Shown here in pieces: positions 6,330-63,949 of a DNA stretch of 64,000 nucleotides (its first letter is position 1; each line of letters begins with the position of its first letter). Made by a program: the position numbers and the translations under genes. The notes below the pieces were generated by a model that was not told where the DNA came from, did no database searches, and worked only from the letters and a program-made list of their open reading frames with translations. Source of the stretch: Octopus bimaculoides. Lineage: Eukaryota. The DNA lies in assembly GCF_001194135.2 (NCBI RefSeq), contig NC_069000.1, forward strand, positions 18,874,060 through 18,938,059, written 5' to 3'.

Positions 6330-6895
6330 CTTGGTAGGCAGAAACTGAAAGAAGCCTGTCGTATGTGTGTATGTATATATGGCCGTTGCCAGTACCGCCT
6401 GACTGGCTCCCGTAGGATTTTCGAGCGAGATCGTTGCCAGTGCCCCTGGACTGGCTTGTGCGGGTGGCACATAAAAGACACCATTTCGAGCGTGGCTGTT
6501 TTCGTGCGGATGACACGTAAAAGCACCCACTACACTCTCTGAGTGGTTGGCGTTAGGAAGGGCATCCAGCTGTAGAAACTCTGCCAAATCAGACTGGAGC
6601 CTGGTGTTGCCATCCGGTTTCACCAGTCCTCAGTCAAATCGTCCAACCCATGCTAGCATGGAAAGCGGACGTTAAACGATGATGATGATGATGTATGTAT
6701 ATGTTTGTGTGTCTGTGTCTCCCCAACATTGCTTGAAAACCGATGCTAGTGTGTTTACGTCCCCGTAACTTAGTGGTGCGGCAAAAGAGACCGATAGAAC
6801 AAGTACAAGGCTTACAAAGAATAAGTCCTGGGGTTGATTTGCTTGACTAAAGGTGCTCCAGCATGGTCGCAGTCAAATGACTGAAACAAAAGAAT
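6330..6895 (+). mobile_element. SINE family 1 (5'-truncated), interrupted by a nested insertion
   Basis: ggtaggcagaaactgaaagaagcc, then a microsatellite, then the insert, then gtccccgtaacttag...gactgaaacaaaagaata. Confidence 0.8.
6381..6693 (+). mobile_element. RTE-type 3'-tail element with (GAT)n tail, nested in the SINE microsatellite
   Basis: gcacccactacactct...ggaagggcatccagctgtagaaactctgcc...gttaaacgatgatgat; the same family occurs at 23196, 32318 and 45680. Confidence 0.8.
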
Positions 6896-16269: not shown

Positions 16270-16630
16270 TAGGCATGGCTGTGTGGTAAGAAGTTTGCTT
16301 GTTAATCACATGGTTCTAGGTTCAGTCCCACTGTGTGGCACCTTGGGTAAGTGTCTTCAACTGTATCCTTGGGCTGACCAAAGCCTTGTGAATTAACTTG
16401 GTAGACAGAAACTGAAAGAAGCCTGTTGTGAGTGTGTGTCTGTCACCCACCACTACTTGATAACTGGTGTTGGTATTTGTATGTCCCTGTAACTTAGTAG
16501 CTTGGCAAAAGAGACTGATAGAATAAGTACCAGGCTTAAAAAAATAGTATCTGGGTTAATTAATTTGACTAAAATTCTTCAAGGCAATGCTCCAACATGG
16601 CCACAGTCTAATGACTGAAACAAATAAATA
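16270..16630 (+). mobile_element. SINE family 1, near full length
   Basis: ggcatggctgtgtggtaagaagtttgc...ggttcagtcccactg...gactgaaacaaataaata. Confidence 0.85.
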
Positions 16631-18580: not shown

Positions 18581-18719
18581 CTATTTAAAAGTTAAACAAG
18601 TTTCCAAGGGGTTGGATTGGCACAGTTGTTAGAGAACTAGAAAACATCCTTGAGGTATTTGTTCCAGTGCTTTAAGTTCTGAGTTCAAATTCTACTGTAA
18701 TCAACTTTGGTTTTCATCC

Positions 18720-21700
18720 TTTTGGATGAAGTTGGTGGAGAGATGAGGAAATGGCAAACTGGAGGAGTATGAGTAATAGGTAGATGAGAGGGGGAGTGAG
18801 GATACAAGGTAAGACAGCAGCAAAGGTAGGTTTGGTAGGGTATGTTTTGTATGGGTAGATGGGTCTCCTGCAGTTTGCATATTGCTTATCTGTATGGCAC
18901 TTTCTTATCACTTCCTTGAGGTGCAGCACCTCCAGATCAGCCTTCACTATTTTATCCCAAGTCTTCTTTGGTCTCCCTCTCGATTGGAGTGTTTGGCACT
19001 TCCATATGTAGCAGGCTGAACTAGATTCCTCCTACACACAGTTTCTCTCAGCTGACTTGTACTCTGACATTGAAGCATACTAAATTTACACAACCATCCA
19101 AACATGACTATTATATAATCTACCTTTCACCTGCCAATAGTGGTATTCTTCCAATCCATCCTTACCCTGGCTACTATACTTTCAGAACAACTACCTCCCC
19201 TGCTAGTTATGTTAGCTAGACAACAGAAGCTATCAACTACATCCAGTGAACCAGCTGGACATTTATTTCTGGTAAGCTCTCAGTACATATGGCTCTGGTA
19301 CATCTGCTACACACAAATCTTTCTTTCTCTGTGGGCTTGCCTTCATTCCATAATATCTGTATCATTAGCATACACTGGGTATGGTATTTGGAGTTTATAC
19401 TTAACAAGTAAGACCATTTCCCTGACAATACCAGGTCCTGTTTCTTTTCTTATTATTAACACTGCAGTTTTTTTGCTAAATTCATCTTGAGGCCTCTTGA
19501 TTCTGAATTTTATTTCTATGTCTGAAATTTCTTCAGATTCAACTATAAGAAATAGATCATCAGCATATAAGAGCTCCCACAGGCAGCTGGCCTTTAATTC
19601 CTCTGTGGTGGCATCAACACTGAACTAACAGTTGATTCTCACAGGCCATTTATCTACACCTGGCTCTGTTATGAACCACCAAATCACTGCATGTCAAACG
19701 CTGCCAAAGGACTCATCCAAGTTGACTAATGCCAAATATAGTGGTTTAGTGTTAGCTAAATATTTCTCCAGTAGATACCTCACTAGGAAAATTACATTTG
19801 TGGTATCAATTCCTGACACTGAACTACATCTCATCTAGGTCTACTCTGTCATGGATCAATTGTGTTATAAATTTCTCCATGACCTACATAAGCTTGGTTC
19901 AACAATTTTAATCCTTTATAATTTACTCTCCTTAAAAGCATCTCTTTTGCCCTTTTAGCCAATTACAATGATACTGCTATGCCTGTCACTGAGTATGACA
20001 CCTTCCTATATTACTTGATTAACTATTCAAATGAATATCAAGCATCCTGCTTTGATTATCAAATATCTTATTTTGATTATCTCAATGATTATCCTTCATG
20101 AATCAGCAGCTTTCTCTATCTTCATGTCTTTAACTTCTGGTTCCTCTATATCATCAACATGAAACAGCCCCTCTTTCTCCTATGCATTATCCTTGTTTAA
20201 CATAATAGCACTGCTTCTATGCCAATTTCTTGTCCTCCACAGCAATGGTGTAGGTGCCTTCATAAGTTTGGATACACTTCTCCCCAGACATCTTGGCTCT
20301 CTCTAACACACTGTCTCACAATCCTGAATACACCATACCTCTGATCTTCACATTGCAGAACATAATACATACACACACACACATATATATATGTATATAT
20401 ATATATATATATACTTTTCTGCTTCTTCCTCAGTCTGCCTTTCTAACTACTTGAAAATGCTTTCTATTACCTTTCTTCCAGGCTTTCCAAGCTTGTTTCT
20501 TTGCTTTTATAGAACTATCTACTAAGCTATCACTTTTTGCTCGGCTGGAAAACTGCACTAGCAACATGTTTTATATGTAGCCATTAGTAGGTTATCTAGA
20601 GGAACTCCCAATTGTCATGTATGCTAAAAGTATCTAATTCCTTTTCATTACAGTCATATGTGTCAATTAGAACTTCTCTAAACCAATGACCAACTGCAAG
20701 ACCTTTTAGCTTCCATGCCTTCCTTCTCCATATTTCTGTTTCTGAATTTGCCTAGTTCTGATTCAAAAGCCATAAGCCACTAATCTGTGAAGATTAATGC
20801 ATTTGTCATAGGGAAAGGTTTTGATATTTCCAATGATTTCTTGATAAGAATGCTCACCAGAGGTGATGAGATGGTGGGTTGGTTTCTCAAAGTGTGTGTA
20901 GCCAATTGGCAAATCAAGTTGCATCACAGAAGTCCAGGAGCCTTACACCCTTACACCATTTCTTGTACCATAGCCATTACTTCCAGGAATATCAAAGGAA
21001 GTCATCATTGCGTTGACTGGCACGGTAGTTAAAGTCACCAACCATGATAATGAAGTTACTGCTGTTCATTGCTGAGGTAGCCTAAGGTCATATAGATATG
21101 GTCTTTCTGTTTGTCAGTCAAACCTGACTGTAGAGTGTACACATAAATAAATGTTGAGTTGTACAAAGCTGATCTCAGTTTAACTATAGTATAGCAAGTC
21201 TGATTACCTCAATTACTCTATCCATCTGATCCTCAACTGACAAGTATGTCTACCATACACTCTGGTTTCTCCTCACACTGAGTGGATAAATCCTTCGCCT
21301 ATCATACACCTACCATCACTTTTACACACCCAGAAAAGTTTGTCTTTGCTGCTTCTTGCCTGTGAAGAGTTTCACTAAGTATCCTTTCCATCTTGCACAA
21401 ATCCACTCCTCTCTGCTCACCAGCATCTTCACAATCTCAACTTTTGTCGAGCCTGTGTTGATACCCAGAAACTTCAGAACTGACAAGTAGTGGGAGTATT
21501 TTCAATGAGAAATGTGTTGGTTGCTGTTTGAAGATGTCTGCATCTATAGGGAAGAGGAAAGCTTGTTGGGATTTGCCAACCACAGGAAGATTCACATTCA
21601 TGGTCTGTTTGTTTGTTTTTTTTTATTAAATTTACATCATTCACCTTTTTCTCACTGTATATCCTACTCTAAGTGTCATTTGTTACTTTCATTGATTAAT
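18720..21700 (-). mobile_element. Decayed RTE-clade LINE (EN and RT remnants)
   Basis: RT motif LWELLYADDL at about 19554-19590 (reverse complement); APE-endonuclease-like start near 21400-21600; many stops and deletions. Confidence 0.8.
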
Positions 21701-23195: not shown

Positions 23196-24179
23196 CATCA
23201 TCATCATCGTTTAACGTCCGCTTTCCATGCTAGCATGGGTTGGACGATTTGACTGCAGATTGGTGGACCAGGTGGCTACACCAGGCTCCAATATGATTTG
23301 GCAGAGTTTCTACAGCTGGATGCCCTTCCTAATGCCAACCACTCCGAGAGTGTAGTGGGTGCTTTTACTTGCCACCGGCACGAAGGCCAGTCAGGAGGTA
23401 CTGGCAACGGCCATGCTCGAAATGGTGTATTTTACATGCCACCTGCACAGGATCCAGTCCAGCAGTACTGGCAACGATCAGCCTCCATCACTTTGTCCTG
23501 TCTTCCTCTTTCAATAGCTCTACCCATATCAAGTGATCAGCACTTCTTTATACAGCTGTCTCCAAACATGCACCATGTCCATACTTGCAGTCTTCTTTCT
23601 TTTACGCTATATCTGATTCCTCTTATACTCAGTTTTTCACATACACATCTAACGGAGTATACTTGCTTCATTTCTTTCCAGTCCATGTCTCACTATCATG
23701 CAGCATTGCATCTCTAACACAAGCATCATATACTCTACCTTTCACTCAAAGGGGGAAAAAGATTTTTGTTTCCAGTAGCGGCAACTTAAACTTCATCCAG
23801 CCCATTCTTCCTCTGGGTACTTAACTTTTGGAACCACCACCTCCCTTGCTAATTATATCTCTTAGGTAACAAAAGCTGTCAACTACCTCTCATGAGCCAA
23901 ACAAGCATTTAAGAGAGACTATTTCTGGTGTACTTATAGTATGTACCGTTCCAATGCCTTCATTACATATGAAGCTTATGTTCTCAGATAATCTGCTTAT
24001 GATTCCACCACACCTTTTGAATTCCCATATCTAACACTGAGTGCAACATATAGAGTTTATACTGACCCCTTATCTGCAAAATGAAGGAAACAAAATTTTG
24101 TGCATGATACAAAATGTATCAAAAAATGAAAGCAATTGCATCATATGAAGAGAGAAAGGTAGGGATAGCATCCTTGAGA

Positions 24180-24235: not shown

Positions 24236-24634
24236 NNNNNNNNNNNNNNNNNNNNNNNNNNNNNNNNNNNNNNNNNNNNNNNNNNNNNNNNNNNNNNNNN
24301 NNNNNNNNNNNNNNNNNNNNNNNNNNNNNNNNNNNNNNNNNNNNNNNNNNNNNNNNNNNNNNNNNNNNNNNNNNNNNNNNNNNNNNNNNNNNNNNNNNNN
24401 NNNNNNNNNNNNNNNNNNNNNNNNNNNNNNNNNNNNNNNNNNNNNNNNNNNNNNNNNNNNNNNNNNNNNNNNNNNNNNNNNNNNNNNNNNNNNNNNNNNN
24501 NNNNNNNNNNNNNNNNNNNNNNNNNNNNNNNNNNNNNNNNNNNNNNNNNNNNNNNNNNNNNNNNNNNNNNNNNNNNNNNNNNNNNNNNNNNNNNNNNNNN
24601 NNNNNNNNNNNNNNNNNNNNNNNNNNNNNNNNNN

Positions 24635-25498: not shown

Positions 25499-26156
25499 AA
25501 ATATATACACAAATATATACAGGGNNNNNNNNNNNNNNNNNNNNNNNNNNNNNNNNNNNNNNNNNNNNNNNNNNNNNNNNNNNNNNNNNNNNNNNNNNNN
25601 NNNNNNNNNNNNNNNNNNNNNNNNNNNNNNNNNNNNNNNNNNNNNNNNNNNNNNNNNNNNNNNNNNNNNNNNNNNNNNNNNNNNNNNNNNNNNNNNNNNN
25701 NNNNNNNNNNNNNNNNNNNNNNNNNNNNNNNNNNNNNNNNNNNNNNNNNNNNNNNNNNNNNNNNNNNNNNNNNNNNNNNNNNNNNNNNNNNNNNNNNNNN
25801 NNNNNNNNNNNNNNNNNNNNNNNNNNNNNNNNNNNNNNNNNNNNNNNNNNNNNNNNNNNNNNNNNNNNNNNNNNNNNNNNNNNNNNNNNNNNNNNNNNNN
25901 NNNNNNNNNNNNNNNNNNNNNNNNNNNNNNNNNNNNNNNNNNNNNNNNNNNNNNNNNNNNNNNNNNNNNNNNNNNNNNNNNNNNNNNNNNNNNNNNNNNN
26001 NNNNNNNNNNNNNNNNNNNNNNNNNNNNNNNNNNNNNNNNNNNNNNNNNNNNNNNNNNNNNNNNNNNNNNNNNNNNNNNNNNNNNNNNNNNNNNNNNNNN
26101 NNNNNNNNNNNNNNNNNNNNNNNNNNNNNNNNNNNNACACACACATGTATGTGTGT

Positions 26157-26213: not shown

Positions 26214-27488
26214 GTTCAATGAGTCGCCAGTTTATATTTTTAATTTTGTGCCTGCACATAGTGTTTTTGTCAACTACACAGTATGGTAGGGTCAGTTGGG
26301 CACTGTCTGTGAGAAAAACAGTACCATGATGCAATTTACTCTGCCAGAAATTTGGAAACGACATGCTGTACTGCTTGGTATTTGCACCAGAAGCTCCAGT
26401 ACAAACATTTCAGAGTTTTTGGGTGTCAACCTGAGAACATGTACTTAGAGTGATAAAAATCAAATATCCAGTCAACATCATGGTGTTTTGGAGTGATCAC
26501 TAGTGATGGTGACGTTATGCCTCCATTCATTTTCTCACACAGCCTCAGACTCAATACAAAGACCTACATCAAGTGCCTGGAGGAGGAAGCGTTGCCCTGG
26601 GTCAAGAGGGTGGCTGCTGGAAGACCCTATGTCAGGCAACAAGACTACACCATTCCACACAAGCAAGGGAACCCAGTCATGGCTATCAAATAATTTCTGT
26701 GACCACATAACCCCCAACATCTGGCCACCTAACTCCCCACACTGCAACCCACTTGATTATTATGTGTGAGGCACAGTTGAGCGAGCGATCAACAAAACTT
26801 CTTTTAACACCAAAGATGAACTAAAGACAAGGATTATGGCAGCATTCACTAACTTAAGCAAGGAGACTGTCCAGAAGAGTTGCAGGAGATTCCAAAGTCA
26901 TCTGGAGGCCATGGTTAAAACTAATGGTAATTTTATTGAATAAATTTACTCTTTAGTATTTCAAGATATTTTTATGTAATTTTGGTAAATATATCTGTTA
27001 AAATGAGATGTCAGTGTTATTTTCATTTTTGCATAATTTATANNNNNNNNNNNNNNNNNNNNNNNNNNNNNNNNNNNNNNNNNNNNNNNNNNNNNNNNNN
27101 NNNNNNNNNNNNNNNNNNNNNNNNNNNNNNNNNNNNNNNNNNNNNNNNNNNNNNNNNNNNNNNNNNNNNNNNNNNNNNNNNNNNNNNNNNNNNNNNNNNN
27201 NNNNNNNNNNNNNNNNNNNNNNNNNNNNNNNNNNNNNNNNNNNNNNNNNNNNNNNNNNNNNNNNNNNNNNNNNNNNNNNNNNNNNNNNNNNNNNNNNNNN
27301 NNNNNNNNNNNNNNNNNNNNNNNNNNNNNNNNNNNNNNNNNNNTAATGGTAATTTTATTGAATAAATTTACTCTTTAGTATTTCAAGATATTTTTATGTA
27401 ATTTTGGTAAATATATCTGTTAAAATGAGATGTCAGTGTTATTTTCATTTTTGCATAATTTATACAACAGTTTATTCACTGCACCCTG
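26210..27488 (+). mobile_element. Non-autonomous Tc1/mariner-family element (internal deletion), copy 1
   Basis: TA|cagggt... and ...caccctg|TA ends; transposase remnants including IWPPNSPHCNPLDYYV; contains a gap with duplicated flanks (26924-27042 = 27344-27462). Confidence 0.85.
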
Positions 27489-30118: not shown

Positions 30119-31224
30119 ATCACTGGTGCTGTTTGGTTGTCTTATTGCTGACTGTGTTCAACACTGCATATATGCTACTAATTTTAATCTCCCTTGGAAG
30201 AGGTAGGTCTGAGAAATTTATTGATTCATGTTTATTTGGGCAACCTTCAAGTAGTTTTCCAATAGAAATTTTGAAGTCACTAAATGCTGATACTTCAAAT
30301 GTTATTGTTGGTACACTTAAATCATCAAGCTACTGTACGTAGAACTTGCTATGAACATCAATTCTTGATTTCATGCTAATTTAAAACACAAGGTTGAAAA
30401 TGTGCCATTTCTAACTTTAGGGAGAAAATATATCAGCTCATCAAAGAAAGTAAAAATGTTATACACACACACACATATATATAGCATGTCCCCCTAATAT
30501 TTAACAAAAAAAAAAAAAAAAAANNNNNNNNNNNNNNNNNNNNNNNNNNNNNNNNNNNNNNNNNNNNNNNNNNNNNNNNNNNNNNNNNNNNNNNNNNNNN
30601 NNNNNNNNNNNNNNNNNNNNNNNNNNNNNNNNNNNNNNNNNNNNNNNNNNNNNNNNNNNNNNNNNNNNNNNNNNNNNNNNNNNNNNNNNNNNNNNNNNNN
30701 NNNNNNNNNNNNNNNNNNNNNNNNNNNNNNNNNNNNNNNNNNNNNNNNNNNNNNNNNNNNNNNNNNNNNNNNNNNNNNNNNNNNNNNNNNNNNNNNNNNN
30801 NNNNNNNNNNNNNNNNNNNNNNNNNNNNNNNNNNNNNNNNNNNNNNNNNNNNNNNNNNNNNNNNNNNNNNNNNNNNNNNNNNNNNNNNNNNNNNNNNNNN
30901 NNNNNNNNNNNNNNNNNNNNNNNNNNNNNNNNNNNNNNNNNNNNNNNNNNNNNNNNNNNNNNNNNNNNNNNNNNNNNNNNNNNNNNNNNNNNNNNNNNNN
31001 NNNNNNNNNNNNNNNNNNNNNNNNNNNNNNNNNNNNNNNNNNNNNNNNNNNNNNNNNNNNNNNNNNNNNNNNNNNNNNNNNNNNNNNNNNNNNNNNNNNN
31101 NNNNNNNNNNNNNNNNNNNNNNNNNNNNNNNNNNNNNNNNNNNNNNNNNNNNNNNNNNNNNNNNNNNNNNNNNNNNNNNNNNNNNNNNNNNNNNNNNNNN
31201 NNNNNNNNNNNNNNNNNNNNNNNN

Positions 31225-32317: not shown

Positions 32318-32591
32318 TATGTGTACTGTGCAGGTGGCACGTAAAATACACCATTTTGAGCGTGGCTGTTGCCAGTATCGCCTGACTGGCCTTCGTGCCA
32401 GTGGCACGTAAAAGCACCCTCTACACTCTCGGAGTGTTTGGCGTTAGAAAGGGCATCCAGCTGTAGAAACTCTGCCAAATCAGATTGGAGCCTGGTGTAG
32501 CCATCTGGTTTCACCAGTCCTCAGTCAAATCGTCCAACCCATGCTAGCATGGAAAGCGGATGTTAAACAATGATGATGATGATGATGATGT
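32318..32591 (+). mobile_element. RTE-type 3'-tail element with (GAT)n tail
   Basis: Near-identical to 6381-6693. Confidence 0.85.
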
Positions 32592-36730: not shown

Positions 36731-36835
36731 CAGAAGGTGCGGGGAATATGGACGAATACAATAATGCCGAATGTCCAGTGAGCATCCATTCCCTCCCATT
36801 TAGGGGCTTGGGACCCTCAAGGTATGAGATCACAC
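36731..36835 (-). CDS. Candidate 105-nt exon (VISYLEGPKPLNGREWMLTGHSALLYSSIFPAPS)
   Basis: Acceptor catttaaccatgccag, donor gtaaca, phase 1-1. The + strand is also open (36700-36821, donor gtatga). Confidence 0.3.
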
Positions 36836-39204
36836 CTGGCATGGTTAAATGGATGTTGTGAATAATAGCAATGACTGCATATTAATACCTCTAAGAAGGA
36901 GAAGATTTATTATGAATCAGTACATGAAATTAGATCAATGTACATGAACATTTCAATGTTCACTTTAATAATAATTGTCACAAAATACATAAAGGTAATA
37001 ATAAAAATCAACTTGATATCTCTAATACATCATTATTATATGGCTATACTTCATACTGCATAGACATTCTATCATTATGATCACTAATTAATATTAAAAA
37101 TGTGTATTAATGTATCATGTTTATTTTCTTATCTTCAAATATAAAAATTATTTTCATTTAAAACCATATTCTAAAGAATATTACTAGTAGAAATATTTTT
37201 AGTAATTGTAATAAAAAATATCATTCTCCCTATTAGCATAATTAAAGCAGAAATTATTATCTCTTATATTTTGTGTTAAATTGATATAATTAAAAGTGTC
37301 CATGTAATTCAGTTAATTTCTCCACTTTTTAAATGTATATACAAAGTAAAATGGAACAAATTAAATATATACTTTGGATGTTAACAACCATTTTGGTAAG
37401 TGTTATGGAAGACAGAGGGATTACTAGTATTTGATAGATGGTTTAATATAATGGTTGTGCAATGATTTAAACTATTATTGTGGAGTTAAAAAAAAAAAAA
37501 AAAAAAGAGAAAATAAAAAGAAAACTAGGATTTAAAACACTGAAATGTTTATTTCAAGAAAGGATATTTCTTTGAATTCTTGATATAAACCTGATAGAAC
37601 CATATTATATTAGTAGAAGGAAAAGAAATAATACATAGGTAGTGATGATTGTTAAAGAGTGCCATAGCTCAGTTCAGTCAGTAAATCCTAAATCTATTGT
37701 AGGTGGATTTATACTATCAGATACATCCATTACAGTCAATCCTTCTACATTAATAGAGATCATGTCTTTGAATCCACCTGAAACCCAACTGCACCCACTC
37801 TCATATTGGAAACAAAAAAGGAGTAAGATAGGATCAAATACCATTAAAATATTGCTTTTAAATGAATTAATGAGTTGTATAAACTGCAGAAGAATTTTAT
37901 TCATTCACTAACATGTTTTTGTCAGAGGAAAGATATACAGCTTCAGAAACCAGAAGATAAAATATATTAATAATTATAACCAGGATATAACAAAGCATAT
38001 AGAACAATGAAACCAACTGCTTTCTATTGGTAAACAGAATAATTCTTTGTTTGAGTAAACAACAGCCAAATCCAGATATGTCAGACTTAACATTTTAAAA
38101 TATATTACAATTAAACTATGTTTATTATGTTAGGGCAAGGTGTAATATCTTCTTAAATATTAGCTGCTAAATTGATCAATTTCTTTTTATCTTATTTTAA
38201 TCAAATCATAGTAAAATTGAAAAAGAAAATTAATTGAATTTTGATTTTATAAGTTTTATAAAAAAAAAAAGAGTTGCAACATTTTATGAGTTCACTTATG
38301 AAAGAAAGTGCATGATTGAAATTACTATAAACACCATTAGCATTAGCTACAGATATTATAAATTTTTTCATAATTTTGTACAAATTTACCAATACAAGTA
38401 AAATCAGGGGGGGAAAAATCTATAATTGTGTACAAATATTCATTAGCAGTTTAGAAGATATTATGCAAATACTGAGAATGAAATGGCTAGAAGTTGACCA
38501 TTGTAGAAGGAAGGATAAAAGAAATAGAGTTATTGTTAAAAAATAGAACTAAGTTTATCATATAACTCAAATTGTAAGTGTTAATGTAATCTAACATCTT
38601 AGACGGGTAATATAAATATTCAGAGATTTATAAAAGCAAGGCAAATAGGAGTAGTAGGTTGAAAAAAAAAAAAAAAACGACAAAATATAGGCAATACCAG
38701 TTTGAAAAACAGAAATGTCATTCATTAGTTATGACTGTTATATGTTAAGTTAGGGATTTACATAAAATACAATTCTATGGGAGTATTAGATATAGTTCTA
38801 AGTTTATCTGATAATGGTTTCTCTATGGTAGATCCCTATGGTTTTTAATAGAACCCACATTATGCTAAAGATATAAGTTTCTATCTAATTTGAAGACTCT
38901 TTATTATACACCAATACAGTAAGCTAGAAGAAGCCTCTACACAATCATTTGATCTGCTAGAAATGGCAAAGAATCTCTCAAATCACGCCCATACCATCTT
39001 ATGTAAGTATAAGAAACATTAATATTATCCTGCATACCCCTAAAAAGAAGGGATGGTCAAGGTAAGAAGGCCTTACCAACCCTTCTGCTCAGTCAGGGTT
39101 GACTTGGAATTAAACAACTTGATCGATTCTGAAAGTAGAAATTTCTTGTTTTTTGATGTTGGATTCAACTAGTGTCTGTCTATAATTTGAATACCTTCTA
39201 AATA

Positions 39205-43751: not shown

Positions 43752-43788
43752 NNNNNNNNNNTACATATATATACATATATATATATGT

Positions 43789-44770: not shown

Positions 44771-45596
44771 CAGGGTGCGGTGAATAAGCTATCATCTAAA
44801 TTATAATGCAAAAATGAAAATAACTGACATCTCATTTTAACAGGTATATTTACTAAAATTACATAAAAGTATCTTGAAATACTAAAGAGTAAATTTATGT
44901 AATAAAATCGCCATTGGCTTCAACCACAGCCTCCAGATGACTTCAGAATCCCTTGCAACTCTTTTCTTGCCTTCAGTTCATCTTTGGTGTTACAAGAAGT
45001 TTTGTTGGTTTCTCACTCAAATGTGCCCCACACATAATAATCAAGTGGGTTGCAGTGTGGGGAGTTAGGTGACCAGATTTTAGAGGTGATGTGGTCACAG
45101 AAATTGTCTGACAGCCATGACTAGATTCACCTGCTTGTGTAGCATGGTGCAGAATCCTAGTCCTCTTGCCAGACATAAGGTCTTCTTTCTTGACCCAGGG
45201 CAACACTACCTCCTCTAGGCATTTCATGTAGGCCTCCATGTTGAGTTTGAGGCCATGTGGGAAGATGAAAGGAGGTATAACGTAACCATCACTAGTGATC
45301 ACTCCAAACACTATGACGGTGACTGGATGTTGGATTTTTATCACTTTCGGTACATGTCTTCAGATTGACACCCAAACACTCTGAAATGTTCATATTGGAG
45401 CTTCTGGTGTGAATGCCAAGCAGTATAGCATGTTGTTTCTAAATGTCTGGCAGAGCAAATTGCGTCATGGTGCTGTTTTTCTCACATACAGTGCCCAGCT
45501 GACCTTACTATACTTTGTAGTCGACAAAATCAAAGACAAACAATGTGCATGCATGAAATAAAAAACATAAAATGGTGACAATTTATCCATCACACC

Positions 45597-45632: not shown

Positions 45633-45642
45633 NNNNNNNNNN

Positions 45643-45682: not shown

Positions 45683-46410
45683 TCATCATTTAATGCCTAA
45701 TTTCCATGGTGGCATGGTTTGGACGGTTTGACTGAGGACTGGTGAGCCAGATGGCTGCACCAGGCTCCAATCTGATCTGGCAGAGTTTCTATAGCTGGAT
45801 GCCCTTCCTAATGCCAACCATTCCGAGAGTGTAGTGGGTGCTTTTACGTGCCACCAACACGAGGGCCAGTCAGGTGGTACTGGTGACGACCAGAGTCAAA
45901 TGGTGTCTTTTATGCGCCACCTGCACAGGAGCCAGTCCAGCGGTGCTGGCTCAAATGGTGTTTTTTATGTGCTACCTGCACAGGAGCCAGTCCAGCAGCA
46001 CTGGCAACGACCTTGCTCCAATGTTGTTTTTCATGTGCCAGTAAGGTGATACTGGTAATGATCACACTCGAATGGTGCTTTTTATGTACCACCGGCATGA
46101 GAGTCAGTCAGCGGCCCTGGCACTGATCATGCCCGGATGGTGTTTTTAATGTTCGACTGGCATGGGTGCCAGTCAGGCAGTGCTGTTATTGGCCACGTCA
46201 GCGAATTTAATTTTGATTTCACTTGCCTCAACAGGTCTTTGCAAGCAAAGTTTAGTGTCCAACAAAAGAAAGGTACGCATAAGTAGGCTGGTTACACCGC
46301 TGGCATGGGCCACAGGACATGGTCTCACTTGGCTTGCAGGGTCTTCTCAAGCACAACATATTTCCAAAGGTATTGGTCACTAGTCATTGCCTTGGTGAGG
46401 CCCAATGTGC
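45680..46410 (-). mobile_element. RTE-type 3'-tail element with about 6 tandem 50-65 bp units
   Basis: catcatttaatgcc...gcagagtttctatagctggatgcccttcc followed by repeated gccagtc...actggc...aatggtg..ttttatgtgccacc units. Confidence 0.8.
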
Positions 46411-46589: not shown

Positions 46590-46935
46590 GATGTTTTACT
46601 TGTTTCAGTCATTAGACTGTGACCATGCTGGGGCATTGCTTTGAAGGGTTAAGTCAAACAAATCGACTTCAGTACTTTTTATTTTTAAACCTGGTATATA
46701 TTCAACAAGTCTCTTTTTTCTGAACCACTAAATTATGGGGATGTAAACAAACCAACAAATGTTGTCAAGCAGGGGGGGCAGACACAAATACAACAGGATT
46801 CTTTCAGTTTCCATTTACCAAATTCTCCACACAAGGCTTTGGATGGCCAATAGCTATAATAGAAGACACTTGCCAAAGGTGTCACACAGTAGGACTTAAC
46901 TTGAAACTATGCAGTTGGGAAGCAAACTTTTTACC
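46590..46935 (-). mobile_element. SINE family 1
   Basis: ttgtttcagtcattagactg...cagtttccatttaccaaat...ctataatagaagacacttgcc. Confidence 0.8.
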
Positions 46936-53990: not shown

Positions 53991-55801
53991 GGAGTGGATG
54001 AAAGGAAAGTGAGAGTCAGTCGATGTCAATTAGTGAGAGCAATGAATTTAAATATATACATATATATCATCATCATCATCATCTTCATTATTTAATGTCC
54101 ATGTCCCATGCTGGCATGGATTGGATGGTTCAATGCTTGTGTTGGTATGGTTTTTAAAGATGGATGCCCCATTCCGAATACCAACCACTTTATGATATAT
54201 AGCTGGTGCTTTTTGACTGGCATTAGCATAGTGAGGTCACCACACATCTTGCAAGATTCAGATCCCCCTTGACTGAGTGGGGCTACAGTAAAGACAGTGG
54301 CTTTATGCCAGGAAATGAGAGGTTAAAGCATGAGAGAAGGGGCTAGAACAGAGCATATTTCCTGCAGTAGAGAAGCTGCATAGTTATTCACATTACAGAG
54401 AATGTAGGAGCGGTAGAGGAAAGAGATAAAATAGTAGTGATGAAGTGTCAAAGTGAACACACACAAGGTATAAAGTGAACAGAAGTGAGTGAGGAAAGGA
54501 GATATAAGGAGTCTGGACAGTGAGAGGTTGTAAGAATGTATGGGAAAGTGAATGGGTGAGGGAGTAATTATTATGATAAACAGATGTTGAGGGATGGTAT
54601 GTAGGAAATGCAGGGAAGAGATGGTGACAACCATAGAAATTAGACAGGGCTGATATGTGGGTGTAGTGATTGGTAGATAAGGAGTGGGTTGAACAATGAG
54701 ACATGTGGGTTGTAGGAGAGCAGGATATAACTGATAGTGCAGAAAAAGTGGGGGTGAAGAACATCAGTATAACAATGATGATGATACAGCAGACATAGGA
54801 AGGGTGAGAGAAGGATTGAGAGCCAGGAGGGACAGAAAATGAAGGAAGGATAACAAGTGAAGTGGGTCAGGTAGTTACAGCAGCAGAATACTGCAGTTAG
54901 AAAGATGATGGGAAGGTGAAAATATCTTGAGAAAGAAATAGAGCAAGTGGTAGAGTTGTGCATATATATATACACATAATGCTTCCAGAATCTCAGTTTC
55001 ACCTAAATGGGTGGCTCTTCATGAGAACCACATATCACCAGTTGTCCTGGTCCATTGTCATCTCCTTTGTGAGGTTCAAGGTCACCACTTTGTCCCAAGT
55101 TTTCCCTTTTCTGCGAGTTTCATACACATTCAATGATGAGCACCTTTTTATACAGTTGTTCTCATCCATATGCACCACATGTCCTTACCAGCACAGTCTT
55201 ATTATATGCATCTGATTCCTTCTATGTACAGTTTTTGTCTTGGCAAATTTGTACTTTGTTGTGCCTGCACAACTTATATTGTACATCCAAAGGAGCATGC
55301 TAGCTTCATTTCTTTCTAGCCCCTGTGCATTCAAGGCCCATGTCTTACTACCATGCAGAATTGCAGTTCTAACACAATCTGCCATTCACATTGAAGGAAA
55401 AGATCTTTCTTGGAATCAATGGCAGTGGCTCCCTGAACTTTTTCCACCCATTACAAACCTGAGCTACTCTATTTTCAAAGCAACCACCTCCCCTGCTAAT
55501 TTAAATCTCCTAGATAACAAAAGCTATCAAATACTTCTAATGAGCCATCTTGATACTTAAAAGAATCTATTTCCAGTGTGTTTGTAGTATGCACTGTGCC
55601 AGTGCATCTGTCCCACATAAAGCTTACTCTGTCTGTTGGTTTGCCTGTGATTCTACTACATATCTTGTCTGCCCATGGGTTATATTAGGTACAGCATATG
55701 GAGTTTATACCTACGCCTTTTCTGCATATAGAACAAAGATATTTCCCTGGAGGTATCAGGGTCCTGTCCTCTTTCATACTTAGTAAAATTTTCATCTTTA
55801 A

Positions 55802-56212
55802 AAAGTTAAAGAAGTGATTTTTTAAATTCTCAATCGCAGAATAATGCTAATAATATAGCCTGAACAGGATAAACTATCCCTATTTTGCAGAGAAAAGTGT
55901 AGGTGACTAGCTGTGGACTCGAACTCACATCCCCGTCATTACATGTGACGAGGCTTTTGCCGATTAAGCTAAACTACCCACTACAAATTCCTCTGCAAAT
56001 TAAGATATATAAATCTCGCTTTATGAGACGCTCTCATATGTTAAATTCAAATTACGACAAACGTAAATAAACAAGCGAAGCTTGGCTATATTATTAGCAT
56101 TATTCTGCGATTGAGAATTTAAAAAATCACTTCTTTAACTTTCTAAAAAAGACATCTCAACGCTTCTAAAAGCAAGCTTCGCTTGTTTATTTACGTTTGT
56201 TGTAATTTGAAT
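55802..56212. mobile_element. 411-bp insertion with 13-bp TSD and interlocked inverted repeats
   Basis: TSD ttttcatctttaa at 55789-55801 and 56213-56225; perfect 59-bp IR 55802-55860/56084-56142; 41-bp IR (1 mismatch) 56043-56083/56174-56214. Confidence 0.85.
55902..55979 (-). ncRNA. tRNA-like cloverleaf (UGU/Thr-like loop), probably not a functional tRNA
   Basis: A-box TAGCTTAATCGG, D stem GCTT/AAGC, stem CGTCA/TGACG with loop CATGTAA, B-box GTTCGAGTC, acceptor GGGTAGT/GCTAGTC; extra nucleotides, a bulge and A33 depart from the tRNA consensus. Confidence 0.65.
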
Positions 56213-56744
56213 TTTTCATCTTTAAGTTTACTTAAGACCTCTTGATTCTAGATTTAGCTTTCATGCCTGGAATTTTCTCTCTAACACCCCTATAAATTCA
56301 GCTGGACAGCCAGTCATAAACTCCTCTGTGATGGCCTGTAAGACTATGAGGAATAGGAACACACTAATGACTGACTTTCTTTTAGAAATCCTCACCTATT
56401 TCCACTCAAAACTTAGGTTAGTCTGGGACTAAGGTGCTGTGCAGGGGAACTTAAAGCAAAACCATGTGGTTGGGTATCAGACTACTTATCCACAGACAAG
56501 CCTGGGGGCTGTACCAAAATTCTGTCTGCTTTGGCATGGTTTCTACAGCTGAATGCCCTTCCTAACACTAACCACTTCAGAGAATGCAGTGGGTGCTTTT
56601 TATGTGGCACTAACACTGGTGAGGTTACAAGTACCAATAAGACAAGACCCTCTCAAATGGCAAATAAGTGAGGTATAGAATTCAGGGATAAAAAAACAAA
56701 ACAAGGATAGAGGGACAGGAGCAGGTATTTTACAGAAGAGGTGA

Positions 56745-57075
56745 ATACAGTTTTCACTTCCTTGTCACTAGAATAATGTTTGCCTCTCAAACCTTTTGTG
56801 GTGCCAAAGAGATGATAGTCCGAAGGTGCTAAATCTGGAGAGTGTGGAGGTAATGAAGAAGTAGCTCAAAGAACAGTCAGCAGAATTTTACGGGGAAGGG
56901 ATACATGCTCTCATTCGAAGGTGGAACATTGCTATTGAGAGAAACAGTGACTATGCTGAGAAGTAGGGATGTGATCCACAGAGGACCAGCTTCATTTTGA
57001 TGTATGATACAGATTCCTGTGTTGGTAATTATACCTGTCCTAAACAAAATGGCATTACTTTTTGACTCACCCTCG
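56745..57075 (+). mobile_element. Mariner 3' fragment with TIR
   Basis: FYGEGIHALIRRWNIAIERNSDYAEK*, then ttactttttgactcaccctcg|TA. Confidence 0.75.
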
Positions 57076-57189: not shown

Positions 57190-58530
57190 GCTGAAAGCTG
57201 CAGTTCCCTCTTTCCATTCCCCCAGAGTCAGTAGTCAATGTAGGGACATTGGAAGATAAGTCTGGTGAGATTGTTGAGATGCTTGAAAGGAGATGTGTTG
57301 ATGTTTGCTGTATCCAAGAAGTTTGGTGGAGGGAGTTTCAACCAGGTTCCTCACAGGCTAATGGAATAGGTATAGACTCTTCTGGAAGGGCAACTGTAAC
57401 GGGGTAGGAGGCATTGGCATACTTCTAGCAGAGAATTGGGGAGGTAAGGTGATTGAGGTAGTCAAAGTATGTGATATTGTACTTAAGCTGAGACTAGTTT
57501 TGCAGAATAGCACAGCAACAATCATTTCTGCCTATGCCCCACAACCAGGCCTGCCAAATTAACAAAAGGACTGTTTTTATGACACTTTTAGCAAGCTACA
57601 TTGAAGACAAGTGACAGTGACTGGAAGGACTGGAAGGGTGGTGGTAGCAAGGAGCTATATCAGACAGCTAGAAGGGAAACTAGGAAGCAGGTATATTTAG
57701 CCGAGGTTGAAGTAGAAAGGAAGAAGTTTGCCAATGTTTTGCAGCAGTGGCTGAAAGTGTTTCGGTTTGTAAGACAATGTGCCAGGGAAAATTATGATGC
57801 TGTGGGAGGGAAGTGTGTTTGCATGATGGTTCACTTGCAGTTAGTGACTCTGAAAAGAAAAGCTTGCAAGTGCCACTGTGAAAAGGCTACTAAATGTAGA
57901 GAACTCTTGAGAGAAAGAGAATCTGCCTTGTGGTGATCCAAAAGGGACCAGCAATCCAAAGAGACAGTAGTGATATAGACAAAGCTATGAAGATGGGGAA
58001 AGCCCTTGGCTCACCAGGAATAACCACTGAGATGCTTAAAATATCTGGCAATGTGGGTTATGGTCTAGTCACCCATATAGTTAATCGGTTAGTACATGGA
58101 GTCATACCCATAAGAAGTGCAGCAACATCATAGGTAGGTTAACTGGGAAAATAGTTTTGTGTGGAAGGTGCACAGGTACAATAAAAACTAAAAATGTAAA
58201 GAAAACAGACTCCATCAAATGCTAGTGGAGTAAGCTAGAGGGAGTTGATAGCTTCTGTTATCTAGGTGCCCAAGTCAGTAGTGGAAGTGGATGCTCTGAG
58301 AACGTAGCTGCAAGGATAGGGATAGGCTGGGCAAAGTTCAGAGAGCTTCTGTCCCTGTTGGCAATAAAGGGCCTCTTCCTCAGAGTGAAAGGCAGACTGT
58401 ATGATGCCCGTGTACAAACAGCCATGCATAGGCTAGAAAGAAATGAAGCTAGTATATCTCACTGGATGTGCAATGTCAGTGTGTATGTACAACAGAGTGT
58501 GAACGTCTTGAGAGAAAAGTTGGGCATAAG
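57190..58530 (+). mobile_element. RTE LINE with multiple internal deletions
   Basis: Endonuclease motif VGTLEDKSGEIVEMLERRCVDVCCIQEV, ISAYAPQPGL, then RT C-terminal remnants. Confidence 0.8.
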
Positions 58531-58599
58531 ATAATGTGGTGTTCTTGTGTATTTTAAATGGTGAATGAAATGTCTGACAAAACAGCAACAACAATAAAA

Positions 58600-61149: not shown

Positions 61150-61760
61150 AATAAACTGTAACATTCTCATACACACACACGTGTCCTTGATATGTAGGAA
61201 AGGTATAGGCTGGAGTGCCATATGGTGTACCCAGTGCCAGCTATGGACGCATAACAGTTGCAGTGGAATCATAAGAAGGTTTAACAGAGAAAGTAGTCTT
61301 TGTATGTGGATTACAGGAGCAATAAGCGCTAGGGACACACAGGAAATACTAACCTATGTGTTGTAGATAGTTTCTGTTACCAAGATGACTTAATTAGTAG
61401 TGGAGGAGGATGTAATGAAAGCATACTTGATAAAATAAGAATAAGATTGAGAAAGTTCAGAGCAATTACTTCTGTAAGCAACAAAAAATTTCTCAGTGAA
61501 AGACAGATTGTATGACACTTATGTAAGAACAGCAATGCTACTTGATAGTGAGATGTGGTCCCTGAATGCAGAAGACTAAAGAGGAATGAAGCATGTATGA
61601 TCCAAAAGATGTGTATCATCAGCATGTACGTATGACATAGTGCAAAGATATTGAGACAAAAATTAGGCATTAGAGGAATCTAATGTAGTGTACAAGAGAG
61701 AAGACTGCGATGGTAAGGTACATTCCACTTGCTGCAATCATTTGAGAACAGAATCAGCAC
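61150..61760 (+). mobile_element. RTE LINE 3' fragment
   Basis: ICRKGIGWSAIWCTQCQLWTHNSCSGI, then ...VQERRLRW remnants. Confidence 0.75.
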
Positions 61761-63949
61761 TTTCATTCCTCTCCTTTGTCACTAACAGTTACCTCACTGT
61801 CTTTATCATCCCTGACTATACTATTTTCAACTGATCACAACCTTCAGTAACCTTTCCTTCCTCTCAGAGTCACATCTTAGACCTGCCATACCTCAGCTTT
61901 AACATCTCTCCTATCTGTGTGGCACTTTGGGCAATTGTCTTCTACTTTAGCCCTTGGCTAACCTAAGCCTTGTGAGTGGACTTGGCAGAAAATAACTGAA
62001 AAAACCCATTGTATATGTACACACACATATGTGTGTGTGTGCATGCATATTACTGTCTCCTTGCTTCAACTTCTTGTGATAGTTATAAACAAGAGTCACT
62101 GAGATGTAAGCAGTGTTCTTTGTTCTTAATCTTATGTGGAAACATGCTTGGTCACAAGGAAATATTACCTCACTTGGAAACAGGTGAGGATTAGCAACAG
62201 GAAGGACATCCAGCCACAGGAAAATTCCCCTCAACAATTTCCATGTGAGCAGGAAAAGTAAACATAAATGTGTACATACAGAAATATACATTTATAACTA
62301 TGTACACACACACACATATATATATATAGACACTTTATTTGTGGATTAAGGCTACCATTGGTTTCATGTTCAGAAAGTCCTTAACAATTATCAAGCCTAT
62401 CTCATGGAACATTGGTGTTTGTCTCCATTTTGGATTAAAACAATGATAATTGTTAATGGCTTCCTTAACATGAAACCAATGGTAGTCTTAATCCACAAAT
62501 GTGGTGTTGAGCACTCATTCTCACTGTTCAATATTTACACATACACACACAACTTTATATTTATACTAGACTTACTACCCAGCCTTGCCTGGTAAAGTAT
62601 TTGTATGTGTGTGTGTGAGAGAGAGAGAGTGCCACTTACACATACATGAGAACATACACAGTCACTCACTCACACATTCTCTCTCTCTAGCATACATGCA
62701 CATGTACATACAAAACAGATGTTCGTATATGTATTGATGTATGTATGTATACATGACAATACACCCCTTCACTCATTCTGTCTCTTTCTCTCTCTTCCTA
62801 TCTCTTTCTGTTTCACACACACACGTCCATTTCAAATACACGTACATACATCTTTCACTTTTTCCTCTCTTTCACTTTAAAACAAAATCAAATTGATAAA
62901 AATTTTTTACAGAAATTAACGAACTCCAGATGATGAAATCACATTCAGTTAAAAATATTTTTAAATGATTAAAATATTGTGTATGTCAAAAAGTCAACAG
63001 TCTTTTTTTTTCTTAGAGAGCGCGAAGACATTGAACGTGTGTTTGTGTTGATTGACATTCTATGACATTCATTATATGTGTGTGTATTCTGTATGTGTGT
63101 TGATGTCATGGAAGCCATGTATTTTTCTCATCAAGAAATAACAAACGTTGTGTTTAATTGTTTAAACAGGTTCAAATGTCACAAAAATTTGTACTGCACT
63201 GCTGAAGGTAAGTATAAAAATAAATATGTAAAAAAAAAATTAAGATACANNNNNNNNNNNNNNNNNNNNNNNNNNNNNNNNNNNNNNNNNNNNNNNNNNN
63301 NNNNNNNNNNNNNNNNNNNNNNNNNNNNNNNNNNNNNNNNNNNNNNNNNNNNNNNNNNNNNNNNNNNNNNNNNNNNNNNNNNNNNNNNNNNNNNNNNNNN
63401 NNNNNNNNNNNNNNNNNNNNNNNNNNNNNNNNNNNNNNNNNNNNNNNNNNNNNNNNNNNNNNNNNNNNNNNNNNNNNNNNNNNNNNNNNNNNNNNNNNNN
63501 NNNNNNNNNNNNNNNNNNNNNNNNNNNNNNNNNNNNNTATATATATATATATATGTATGTATATATGTATGTATATATGTATACTCACTGTAAACACCAG
63601 CTCATCTACTTCCGGGTCTATAAACCAGTTTTCTTGCTATGAAACTGAACTACATAGCTCTGTATAATATGTAGTGTGTGTGTGTGTGTGTGTAGACAAA
63701 TAGATAGATGGATAGACAGTCATACAGACAAAGAGAGAGAACAAGAAAGACCTACTCATAGATATATCAAATAACATCCTCTTCATCTCAGGCAGTATTG
63801 AAAGAGAGGAAGTTAGAGAGAAAAAATGTAAAAAATGAAGGTGAACATGTGATAGAATAAGATTGGAGTGAGAGAAAGAATGTCTGCGTGTGACACAAAA
63901 TGAGAGCTAGCTACACACTTGCATATATCTATTTATCTATCTATCTATC

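What the first reader, a model, noticed from the sequence alone, without database searches (positions are those of the whole stretch)
55802..56212. Unclassified 411-bp mobile element: tRNA-like core inside interlocked inverted repeats
It is inserted into an RTE RT region with a 13-bp TSD (removing it restores ...VNLKMKIL...). Architecture is A-[hairpin, C-tRNA-like-C']-B-A'-spacer-B': A begins at the left boundary, B' ends at the right boundary, and the internal B-A' block is the reverse complement of A joined to B'. The tRNA-like domain is internal and sits on an imperfect 20-bp stem (55883-55902/55981-56000), unlike a normal SINE with a 5' tRNA head and simple tail. There is no ORF and no true terminal TIR pair. 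Near-perfect arms imply youth. The long TSD suggests target-primed insertion, and inverted end segments recall Penelope-like pLTR integration, so it may be an undescribed non-autonomous structured-RNA retroelement.
Basis: partly seen in the sequence, partly recalled or inferred. Interest (0 to 1): 0.72.

Follow-up and report, generated by a model that had tools for sequence, protein, structure and literature searches.

The report
Inverted two-piece insertion of tRNA-like retroposon
The 411-bp insert is real and young, but its puzzling interlocked inverted repeats are most simply explained as two head-to-head partial copies of one ~312-nt tRNA-like repeat unit laid down in a single reverse-transcription event, so it looks like a rearranged copy of a SINE-like retroposon and not a new kind of element.

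Summary
A 411-bp insert (55802-56212) is flanked by a perfect 13-bp target-site duplication. It carries interlocked inverted repeats: A/A' match 59/59 and B/B' match 41/42. It also holds a stalked, sub-threshold tRNA-like domain on the minus strand (Rfam 22.2 bits, cut-off 29).

The architecture reduces exactly to rc(Q-z-P) followed by (P-y-Q). These are two partial copies of one ~312-nt unit, joined 5'-end to 5'-end, with z the tRNA-like core. "Internal block = reverse complement of the joined ends" then follows automatically.

Three features fit dual-strand target-primed reverse transcription of a longer-than-unit (tandem or circular) RNA:
- both outer ends abut the duplication with about 7/10 complementarity between target and template;
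- the two arms and the duplication are equally pristine;
- the tRNA-sense strand is depleted of T-runs.

This resembles the complex insertions of Penelope-like elements, or LINE twin priming. The enzyme is unknown.

No hammerhead ribozyme, no terminal inverted repeats and no second copy were found in the window or in any database I could reach, none of which appears to hold this genome. Repbase and Dfam were not available. Whether the family is new therefore stays untested, and the organism was not identified.

I rate it a probable rearranged member of a known kind, of moderate interest.

The parts
55789..55801 (.). Left copy of the target-site duplication, TTTTCATCTTTAA
   Evidence: 13/13 identical to 56213-56225. 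Its 3' end TCATCTTTAA matches the reverse complement of the template sequence just beyond the left start point (y start) at 7/10.
55802..56084 (-). Fragment 1: inverted partial copy. Read on the minus strand it is Q - z - P (283 nt), with its 5' end at the centre and its 3' end (end of P) at the left boundary.
   Evidence: Decomposition checked. It holds the tRNA-like core in the sense orientation on the minus strand.
55802..55860 (-). Arm A (= reverse complement of P)
   Evidence: 59/59 complementary to 56084-56142.
55861..55880 (-). Linker with a small hairpin (GGATA..TATCC)
   Evidence: Seen in the folds.
55881..55902 (-). 3' arm of the stalk that closes the tRNA-like domain. It contains the only internal T4 run of the sense strand.
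   Evidence: 18/22 pairing with 55981-56002. T-run count.
55905..55978 (-). tRNA-like domain (cloverleaf, A box TAGCTTAATCGG, B box GAGTTCGAGTCC, anticodon loop CAUGUAA)
   Evidence: Rfam RF00005, 22.2 bits (gathering score 29), model positions 1-71, E 0.0086 in a local search and 4.4 over the whole window. Not called by ARAGORN.
55981..56002 (-). 5' arm of the stalk
56003..56042 (-). Unit leader: a TATA-like TTTATATAT about 25-33 nt upstream of the tRNA-like domain, and the hairpin ATGAGAGCGTCTCAT
   Evidence: Read directly from the sequence. Any promoter role is inferred.
56043..56084 (-). Arm B (= reverse complement of Q). In fragment 1 it lies upstream of the unit start, so it acts as a partial tandem, pLTR-like piece.
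   Evidence: 41/42 complementary to 56173-56214.
56084..56085 (.). Inversion junction, where the 5' ends of the two fragments meet. G56084 is shared by both arms (1-nt overlap).
   Evidence: Arms I1 and I2 both include position 56084.
56084..56214 (+). Fragment 2: direct partial copy P - y - Q. It ends in a T-run that merges with the duplication (56213-56214 could belong to either).
56143..56172 (+). Spacer y. It is present once. Together with Q it forms a 72-nt 'tail' found at the right end only.
56213..56225 (.). Right copy of the target-site duplication
   Evidence: The target sequence TTTTTCATCT matches the unit's continuation after GAA (TTTAACATAT) at 7/10 (sequences printed; the match was counted by hand).
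55300..56400 (-). Host: degraded LINE-type reverse-transcriptase C-terminal region, interrupted by the insert
   Evidence: Translation of the joined flanks. Paralogues at about 19.2-19.6 kb, 23.7-24.1 kb, 58.2-58.5 kb and 61.2-61.6 kb.

Best explanation
The insert is one young integration of a non-autonomous, tRNA-related, SINE-like retroposon whose basic unit is about 312 nt.

The unit, read in the tRNA sense, is:
- a leader;
- a stalked tRNA-like domain with Pol III A and B boxes;
- a linker;
- P (59 nt);
- y (30 nt);
- Q (42 nt), ending in a T-run.

Mechanism (inferred). At a staggered break with 13-nt 3' overhangs, both overhangs primed reverse transcription on a template longer than one unit. 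That template could be a tandem-array transcript, a circular RNA, or two RNAs linked by a template jump.
- The bottom-strand overhang started at the end of Q and copied Q, y and P. This gives the direct fragment, 56084-56214.
- The top-strand overhang started at the end of P and copied P, the core and on into the Q of the preceding unit. This gives the inverted fragment, 55802-56084.
- The two cDNA ends were then joined with a 1-nt overlap.

The fragments overlap in P and in Q. The interlocked repeats A/A' and B/B', and the fact that the internal block equals the reverse complement of the joined ends, follow automatically.

The enzyme is not identified. The pattern (inverted 5'-truncated copy, partial tandem piece, tail at one end only) works like the insertion of Penelope-like elements. 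LINE twin priming is the alternative.

Shown: the anatomy, the duplication, the exact decomposition, the microhomologies and the strand asymmetry of T-runs.

Inferred: an RNA template, its multimeric nature, Pol III transcription and the enzyme.
For: 1. Exact decomposition. rc(55802-56084) = Q z P and 56084-56212 = P y Q, with P 59/59 and Q 41/42. One assumption, two overlapping head-to-head pieces of a repeating unit, reproduces every repeat in the element.

2. A clean 13-bp duplication flanks the whole structure, so it was one event. The joined flanks give a continuous reading frame.

3. The arms and the duplication are equally pristine. There is one CpG-to-TpG change in 114 duplicated positions, as expected if all three arose together.

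4. Both start points show target-template complementarity beyond the copied part.
- Left: 7/10 (P about 0.009; only 4 of 313 unit positions reach this).
- Right: 7/10 against the Q-to-z continuation (sequences printed; the match was counted by hand).
- The imperfect match shows annealing. A copy of the flank would have matched perfectly.
- The right-hand match needs a template that continues past Q.

5. No direct repeat of 6 bp or more flanks the internal block. This argues against a nested insertion.

6. The tRNA-sense strand has one internal T>=4 run against five A>=4 runs, although T is its commonest base (P about 0.004). It ends in a T-run. Both fit a Pol III transcript in that sense.

7. 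Literature.
- Penelope-like insertions are partial tandems plus an inverted 5'-truncated copy, with a tail at one end (PMC8557442).
- A Penelope-like protein cleaves and extends both strands, starts internally, and uses multi-copy RNA (PMC11167929).
- 5' inversions go with 10-20-bp duplications, because the overhang must pair with the RNA (PMC4245944).
Against: - There is only one copy. No second copy was found anywhere I could search, so the unit, its ends and its multimeric template all rest on this single locus.
- For L1-type twin priming the 59-nt overlap is long (median 12 bp). Twin priming of a SINE is also very rare: 0.02% for Alu (PMC12016303).
- For a Penelope-like mechanism there is no hammerhead motif. 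No GIY-YIG or Penelope-like reverse transcriptase was seen in the window. The 72-nt 'tail' is longer than the 30-40 bp reported. Initiation by the Penelope-like protein was reported NOT to depend on homology with the target.
- Each microhomology is only about P 0.01, and the boundaries were chosen after seeing the data.
- The tRNA-like domain is below Rfam's threshold.
- The T4 run directly after the tRNA-like domain could stop Pol III early.
- The window comes from a gapped scaffold, and reads could not be checked.
Confidence: 0.55

Rival explanations
1. Native architecture. A-[stalked tRNA-like]-B-A'-spacer-B' is the conserved design of an undescribed structured-RNA retroelement family, and every copy carries it.
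For: The arms are near perfect and the total fold is very stable (z-scores -14 and -17). A duplication flanks the unit. No known family matched in Rfam.
Against: The design has no independent logic. It is exactly what two overlapping head-to-head partial copies give. The arm boundaries coincide with the fragment ends. The flank-template microhomologies are unexplained under this view. The A-A' and B-B' pairings cross each other (an interlocked, pseudoknot-type arrangement), and the nested-structure folds form only A-A'.
Confidence: 0.13
2. Nested insertion. A 101-bp deletion derivative (A joined to B') of the same family inserted, in reverse orientation, into a full-length copy.
For: The internal block equals a complete 'mini-element' with both termini.
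Against: The internal block has no target-site duplication: no direct repeat of 6 bp or more flanks it. This view needs a second event, a mini-element with exactly the parent's termini, and no divergence between the two copies. No free mini-element occurs in the window.
Confidence: 0.07
3. The structure was not built by reverse transcription. Either it is an assembly artefact, or a simple insert was rearranged in place by replication template switching, or a staggered break was filled by DNA synthesis copied from a tandem satellite or circular DNA of the same 312-bp unit.
For: The window is a gapped, short-read-style scaffold. Complex inverted and tandem insertions are known to trouble such assemblies (PMC8557442). 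Microhomology-primed copying from both break ends would give the same sequence whether the template were DNA or RNA.
Against: The element lies in a 17.6-kb ungapped stretch. The arms (59 and 42 bp) are shorter than typical reads. The clean 13-bp duplication and the ordered fragment structure are not what a mis-join typically gives. The staggered 13-nt duplication points to endonuclease nicks.
Confidence: 0.17
4. A DNA transposon of MITE or foldback type, with long subterminal inverted repeats.
For: It has long perfect inverted repeats and is AT-rich. The inner stalk is flanked by TA on both sides (55881-82 and 56001-02), so the core itself could be an old TA-targeting MITE.
Against: The ends are not inverted repeats of each other (5/20). 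By general knowledge of the cut-and-paste superfamilies, a 13-bp duplication is longer than they usually make. A/A' does not span the element.
Confidence: 0.05

Closest known systems
Complex insertions of Penelope-like elements and their non-autonomous derivatives (pLTR partial tandems, inverted 5'-truncated copy, one-sided tail; animal non-LTR retrozymes; MRC1 of Chlamydomonas)
   Same: Two copies lie head to head with their 3' ends facing outward. A partial tandem piece (Q ahead of the unit start) is present. An extra 'tail' (y+Q) sits at one end only. The target is AT-rich. The template is inferred to be multi-unit RNA primed on both strands (PMC8557442, PMC11167929, bioRxiv 10.64898/2026.07.22.740005).
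   Different: There is no hammerhead ribozyme. No link to a Penelope-like reverse transcriptase or GIY-YIG endonuclease gene was found. The tail is 72 nt, not 30-40. The start points show partial homology to the target. The unit carries a tRNA-like module, which is not a reported feature of these elements.
LINE-1 twin priming (5'-inverted insertions)
   Same: The insert has an inverted 5' part followed by a direct 3' part inside one duplication of 10-20 bp. The second-strand overhang anneals to the RNA. The cDNAs overlap at the junction (PMC4245944, PMC12016303).
   Different: There is no poly(A) tail and no TTTT/A cleavage site. The overlap is 59 nt against a median of 12. There is a second overlap (Q), which needs a longer-than-unit template. 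Twin priming is almost never seen in SINEs such as Alu.
tRNA-derived SINEs
   Same: The element is short and non-coding. It has a tRNA-related segment with A and B boxes. The sense strand is poor in T-runs and ends in a T-run. A target-site duplication is present.
   Different: The tRNA-like part is not at the 5' end of the inferred unit; about 60 nt of leader precede it. It sits on a 22-bp stalk. No LINE-derived tail could be recognised. Copy number is unknown.
Schistosome Sm-alpha-type elements (about 335-bp satellite-like SINEs with a Pol III promoter and a hammerhead ribozyme; cited from my own knowledge, not checked here)
   Same: A unit of about 300 nt carries tRNA-like Pol III boxes and apparently exists as multimers that are copied into dispersed sites.
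   Different: No ribozyme was detected in this unit. Tandem arrays were not observed, only inferred.
DIRS1-type elements (inverted terminal repeats plus an internal complementary region)
   Same: An internal block is complementary to terminal sequences and lies next to the right inverted repeat.
   Different: The internal block joins the INNER ends of A and B', not the outer ends, so it is not a circle junction. A 13-bp duplication is present. There is no tyrosine recombinase.

Membership tests
tRNA-derived SINE | tRNA-related region with Pol III A and B boxes | tested here: inconclusive
   Rfam tRNA gave 22.2 bits, below the gathering score of 29, with a full-length alignment and both boxes visible. 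ARAGORN was negative.
tRNA-derived SINE | tRNA-related head at the 5' end of the element | tested here: not met
   The domain is internal in the insert. In the inferred unit it starts about 60 nt from the unit start.
tRNA-derived SINE | Variable target-site duplications from LINE-mediated insertion | tested here: met
   A 13-bp perfect duplication is present. Only this one copy could be examined.
tRNA-derived SINE | Many dispersed copies, and a 3' tail shared with a partner LINE | not testable with these tools
   No other copy in the window. No hit in the protein, metagenome, prokaryote-genome or viral collections. The source genome does not appear to be in any of them.
Penelope-like element derivative / retrozyme | Partial tandem (pLTR) and an inverted 5'-truncated copy in one insertion, with a tail at one end | tested here: met
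   Fragment 1 is Q-z-P inverted, fragment 2 is P-y-Q direct, and y+Q is present at the right end only. This matches the description in PMC8557442.
Penelope-like element derivative / retrozyme | Hammerhead ribozyme motif in the repeat | tested here: not met
   No hammerhead hit in Rfam at E<=10 over 55600-56400. No CUGANGA core on either strand of a unit dimer. Naiad and Chlamys Penelope-like elements also lack it (PMC8557442).
Penelope-like element derivative / retrozyme | Sequence similarity to the 3' end or pLTR of an autonomous Penelope-like element (reverse transcriptase plus GIY-YIG endonuclease) | not testable with these tools
   A regex scan of six-frame translations found no GIY-YIG-like motif in the 64-kb window.
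L1-type twin-primed insertion | Inverted 5' segment plus direct 3' segment within one duplication of 10-20 bp | tested here: met
   The duplication is 13 bp.
L1-type twin-primed insertion | Poly(A) tail and TTTT/A cleavage site | tested here: not met
   The element ends ...GAATTT and the site is AAAA|TTTT.
L1-type twin-primed insertion | Short overlap or gap at the inversion point, with a template of one linear RNA | tested here: not met
   The overlap is 59 nt, and a second overlap of 42 nt needs a terminally redundant template. The L1 median is 12 bp (PMC12016303).
MITE / terminal-inverted-repeat DNA transposon | Terminal inverted repeats at the two ends and a short duplication of fixed length | tested here: not met
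   The ends match at 5/20. The duplication is 13 bp.
DIRS1-like retroelement | Internal complementary region equal to the circle junction of the outer termini, and no target-site duplication | tested here: not met
   The internal block joins the inner ends of A and B'. A duplication is present.

The most novel reading that the evidence does not exclude
The ~312-nt unit belongs to an undescribed class analogous to retrozymes. Under this reading it is a non-autonomous retroelement that exists as tandem or circular RNA. A stalked tRNA-like module takes the place of a hammerhead ribozyme. That module would serve both as the Pol III promoter and as an RNase P/Z (and tRNA-ligase) processing signal that yields unit-length or circular templates. 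The element would be inserted by a Penelope-like enzyme that primes on both strands. The interlocked repeats would then be the recurrent, variable footprint of that mechanism.
Probability: 0.1. Interest if true: 0.75.

Novelty: new member of a known kind. Interest (0 to 1): 0.38.

Why it matters
If the reading is right, this locus is a clean worked example of how an apparently exotic repeat architecture arises. Interlocked inverted repeats can come from dual-strand target-primed copying of a multimeric template, so repeat annotators should not treat such structures as new element classes.

It would also be indirect evidence that a tRNA-like, Pol III-type short retroposon can be copied from longer-than-unit RNA. 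It would show insertion with the tandem, inverted and tailed footprint so far tied to Penelope-like elements. That would widen the set of passengers of that little-understood machinery.

In addition, the 59-bp perfect hairpin sits inside a LINE remnant. If it is transcribed it could be a source of double-stranded RNA.

Tried and rejected
Searches for other copies, all empty:
- BLASTN and nhmmer of the element and of the unit against the window gave only self hits.
- The 55-aa ORF across the core had no homologue in the protein collection, and exact ORF look-ups failed.
- Exact-pattern scans of metagenome contigs, prokaryote genomes and viral contigs found nothing.
- A full-text search of papers for four k-mers found nothing.

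Organism identification failed:
- The degraded reverse-transcriptase fragment found no homologue.
- A better-preserved LINE fragment hit only distant proteins, at most 64% identity.
- The contigs of two of those hits are unrelated animal DNA without the element.

Other negative or blocked steps:
- Pfam found nothing on the host-element fragments, and it refuses translations that contain stop codons.
- Rfam found no ribozyme or other family in the element. The only hits were spurious plant-miRNA hairpin matches caused by the inverted repeats.

Readings I rejected:
- DIRS-type 'internal circle junction'. The block joins the inner ends, not the outer ends.
- Two independent adjacent insertions. 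There is only one duplication around both fragments.
- In-situ inverted duplication that includes the flank. The flank matches only 7/10 while the arm matches 59/59.
- The RTE insertion signature (T at the first base of the duplication plus a T-stretch 10 bases upstream; PMC6007223). It is not evident in either orientation, and a single site cannot decide.

Full report
**1. What is there**

The region 55802-56212 is a 411-bp insert in a degraded LINE-type reverse-transcriptase remnant on the minus strand.

- It is flanked by the direct repeat TTTTCATCTTTAA, at 55789-55801 and 56213-56225. The match is 13/13, or 15/16 if three more bases are included.
- Joining the flanks with one copy of the repeat gives a continuous ...VNLKMKILLSMKEDRTLIPPGKYLCSICRKG... 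frame.
- A diverged paralogue of the same LINE, at about 19.39-19.56 kb, crosses the site without an insert.

Inside the insert:
- A (55802-55860) and A' (56084-56142) are complementary at 59/59.
- B (56043-56084) and B' (56173-56214) are complementary at 41/42. The one difference is CpG versus TpG.
- A 22-bp stalk (55881-55902 / 55981-56002) pairs at 18/22 (P about 2e-7). It closes a tRNA-like domain.

The tRNA-like domain lies on the minus strand (55978..55905). Rfam aligns it over the whole tRNA model at 22.2 bits, below the gathering score of 29. It has clear A and B boxes and a damaged T stem. ARAGORN does not call it. It is the only tRNA-like match in the 64-kb window.

The two ends of the insert are not inverted repeats of each other (5/20). 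The element occurs once in the window. It lies in an ungapped stretch of 17.6 kb.

**2. The architecture reduces to two overlapping pieces of one unit**

Write P = A', Q = B', y = the 30-nt spacer, and z = the core read in the tRNA sense. The insert is then exactly rc(Q z P) followed by (P y Q).

These are two partial copies of a repeating unit [z P y Q] of about 312 nt. They are joined 5'-end to 5'-end at position 56084, with their 3' ends facing outward.

Any two such pieces that together exceed one unit overlap twice. Those overlaps are the two arm pairs. It also follows automatically that the internal block B-A' equals the reverse complement of A joined to B'.

No feature of the interlocking needs a separate explanation. 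I therefore do not read it as the native design of a family.

**3. Evidence that it was one target-primed event on a longer-than-unit template**

- One duplication surrounds both pieces.
- The arms and the duplication are equally pristine, with one CpG transition in 114 duplicated positions. All three look the same age.
- The internal block has no duplication of its own. This speaks against a nested mini-element.
- At the left boundary, the 3' end of the target overhang (TCATCTTTAA) matches the reverse complement of the template just beyond the start point (the start of y) at 7/10. The probability is about 0.009, and only 4 of 313 unit positions do as well.
- At the right boundary, the target (TTTTTCATCT) matches the unit's continuation after the end of Q (TTTAACATAT, known from fragment 1) at 7/10. 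The sequences are printed and I counted the match by hand.

The matches are imperfect while the arms are perfect. They therefore look like primer annealing and not like copied flank.

The right-hand match, and the presence of Q upstream of z in fragment 1, both require a template that runs past one unit. That could be a tandem-array transcript, a circular RNA, or an end-to-end template jump.

These microhomologies are suggestive and not decisive. The boundaries were chosen after seeing the data.

**4. Which strand is the RNA**

In the tRNA sense, the unit has a single internal T>=4 run against five A>=4 runs, although T is its commonest base (P about 0.004). It ends in a T-run. The stalk contains one G.U pair in that sense.

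This fits a Pol III transcript in the tRNA sense that ends at Q. It makes the right-hand fragment the 'direct' one.

Two points sit awkwardly with a standard SINE and are unexplained:
- a T4 run lies directly 3' of the tRNA-like domain;
- about 60 nt of leader, with a TATA-like TTTATATAT, precede the domain.

**5. Mechanism and enzyme**

The pattern is dual-strand target-primed reverse transcription.

*Literature in favour of a Penelope-like route*
- Insertions of Penelope-like elements are typically partial tandems, with an adjacent inverted 5'-truncated copy and a tail at one end (PMC8557442).
- A purified Penelope-like protein cleaves and extends both strands. It starts internally at two sites and is thought to use multi-copy RNA (PMC11167929).
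- Animal retrozymes are proposed to be non-autonomous derivatives of Penelope-like elements (bioRxiv 10.64898/2026.07.22.740005).

The insert maps onto this scheme: an inverted copy ending at P, a direct copy ending at Q, a tail y+Q on one side, and Q ahead of z as a pLTR-like piece.

*Points against a Penelope-like route*
- There is no hammerhead motif.
- No GIY-YIG motif was found in the window.
- The tail is 72 nt long.
- There is target homology at the start points.

*LINE twin priming as the alternative*
- It fits the 13-bp duplication and the annealing (PMC4245944).
- Against it, L1 overlaps are short (median 12 bp), and twin priming of a SINE such as Alu is extremely rare (PMC12016303).
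- There is also no poly(A) tail and no L1-type cleavage site.
- The RTE insertion signature (PMC6007223) is not visible, though one site cannot decide.

I therefore commit to the general mechanism at about 0.55 and leave the enzyme open.

**6. Rivals**

- Native architecture: about 0.13.
- Nested mini-element: about 0.07.
- Assembly artefact, in-situ template switching, or DNA-templated break repair from a tandem or circular DNA copy of the unit: about 0.17.
- DNA transposon of MITE or foldback type: about 0.05.

A DIRS-type internal circle junction is excluded. The internal block joins the inner ends of the arms, not the outer ends, and a duplication is present.

**7. What could not be done**

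No second copy could be found. All of the following were empty:
- the ORF across the core;
- exact-pattern scans of metagenome, prokaryote-genome and viral collections;
- a full-text search of papers.

The organism was not identified. LINE fragments hit nothing, or only distant proteins, and the contigs of two of those proteins are unrelated.

The collections evidently do not hold this genome, and Repbase and Dfam were not available. Three things remain untested: whether the family is catalogued, how many copies exist, and whether the interlocked form recurs.

**8. Verdict**

The 'new architecture' is most likely the footprint of one rearranged integration of a ~312-nt tRNA-like retroposon.

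I class it as a new member of a known kind, of moderate interest (0.38).

The most novel reading still open, at about 0.1, is a retrozyme-like multimeric or circular element in which a stalked tRNA-like module replaces the ribozyme.

Noticed in passing
window 36787-36851 (-): A twister-P1 ribozyme-like sequence scores 44.6 bits (gathering score 67.2) over the full model, with E 1.3e-6 for the whole window. It keeps the conserved core (UUUAAC..GCC..GGUCCCAAGCCC..GGAGGGAA), but one stem is weak. It is a possible self-cleaving ribozyme, perhaps part of a repeat.
   Followed up: partly
window 55881-56002: The stalked tRNA-like core is bracketed by TA on both sides (55881-82 and 56001-02), with roughly 20-bp imperfect inverted arms. 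It could be an old TA-targeting MITE-like module captured in the unit, and not necessarily an RNA stalk.
   Followed up: partly
window 6315-6629 (-), 23253-23714 (+), 32365-32511 (-), 45732-45881 (+), 56519-56700: A recurrent repeat family is recognisable by the conceptual peptide LDALPNANHSESVVGAFTCH. One copy lies just beside the insert, inside the same LINE remnant.
   Followed up: no
window 114-329 (+), 6637-6846 (-), 16325-16555 (-), 46724-46900 (+): A second recurrent short repeat family has the conceptual peptide ...TTGFFQFPSTK... It was not recognised as tRNA-like by Rfam.
   Followed up: no
window 26457-26766 (+), 44976-45359 (-), 56656-56865 (-): Mariner/Tc1-like transposase remnants are present (for example ...HSPDLAPSDYHLF...). 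One of them interrupts the same LINE remnant about 450 bp from the insert.
   Followed up: no
window 57195-58531 (+), 18717-19624 (-), 23683-24085, 61151-61600 (+): Further degraded copies of the same LINE family are present. Pieces include an endonuclease-like N-terminus, ...LLYADDL..., and a cysteine-rich CxxC...C motif after the reverse transcriptase. The clade (RTE or other) was not verified.
   Followed up: partly
window 24236-24634, 25525-26136, 27043-27343, 30524-31224, 43752-43761, 45633-45642, 63250-63537: There are seven N gaps, mostly inside (TC)n, (TA)n or (CA)n-type microsatellites. The window comes from a gapped scaffold of an AT-rich (about 35% GC) animal genome.
   Followed up: no
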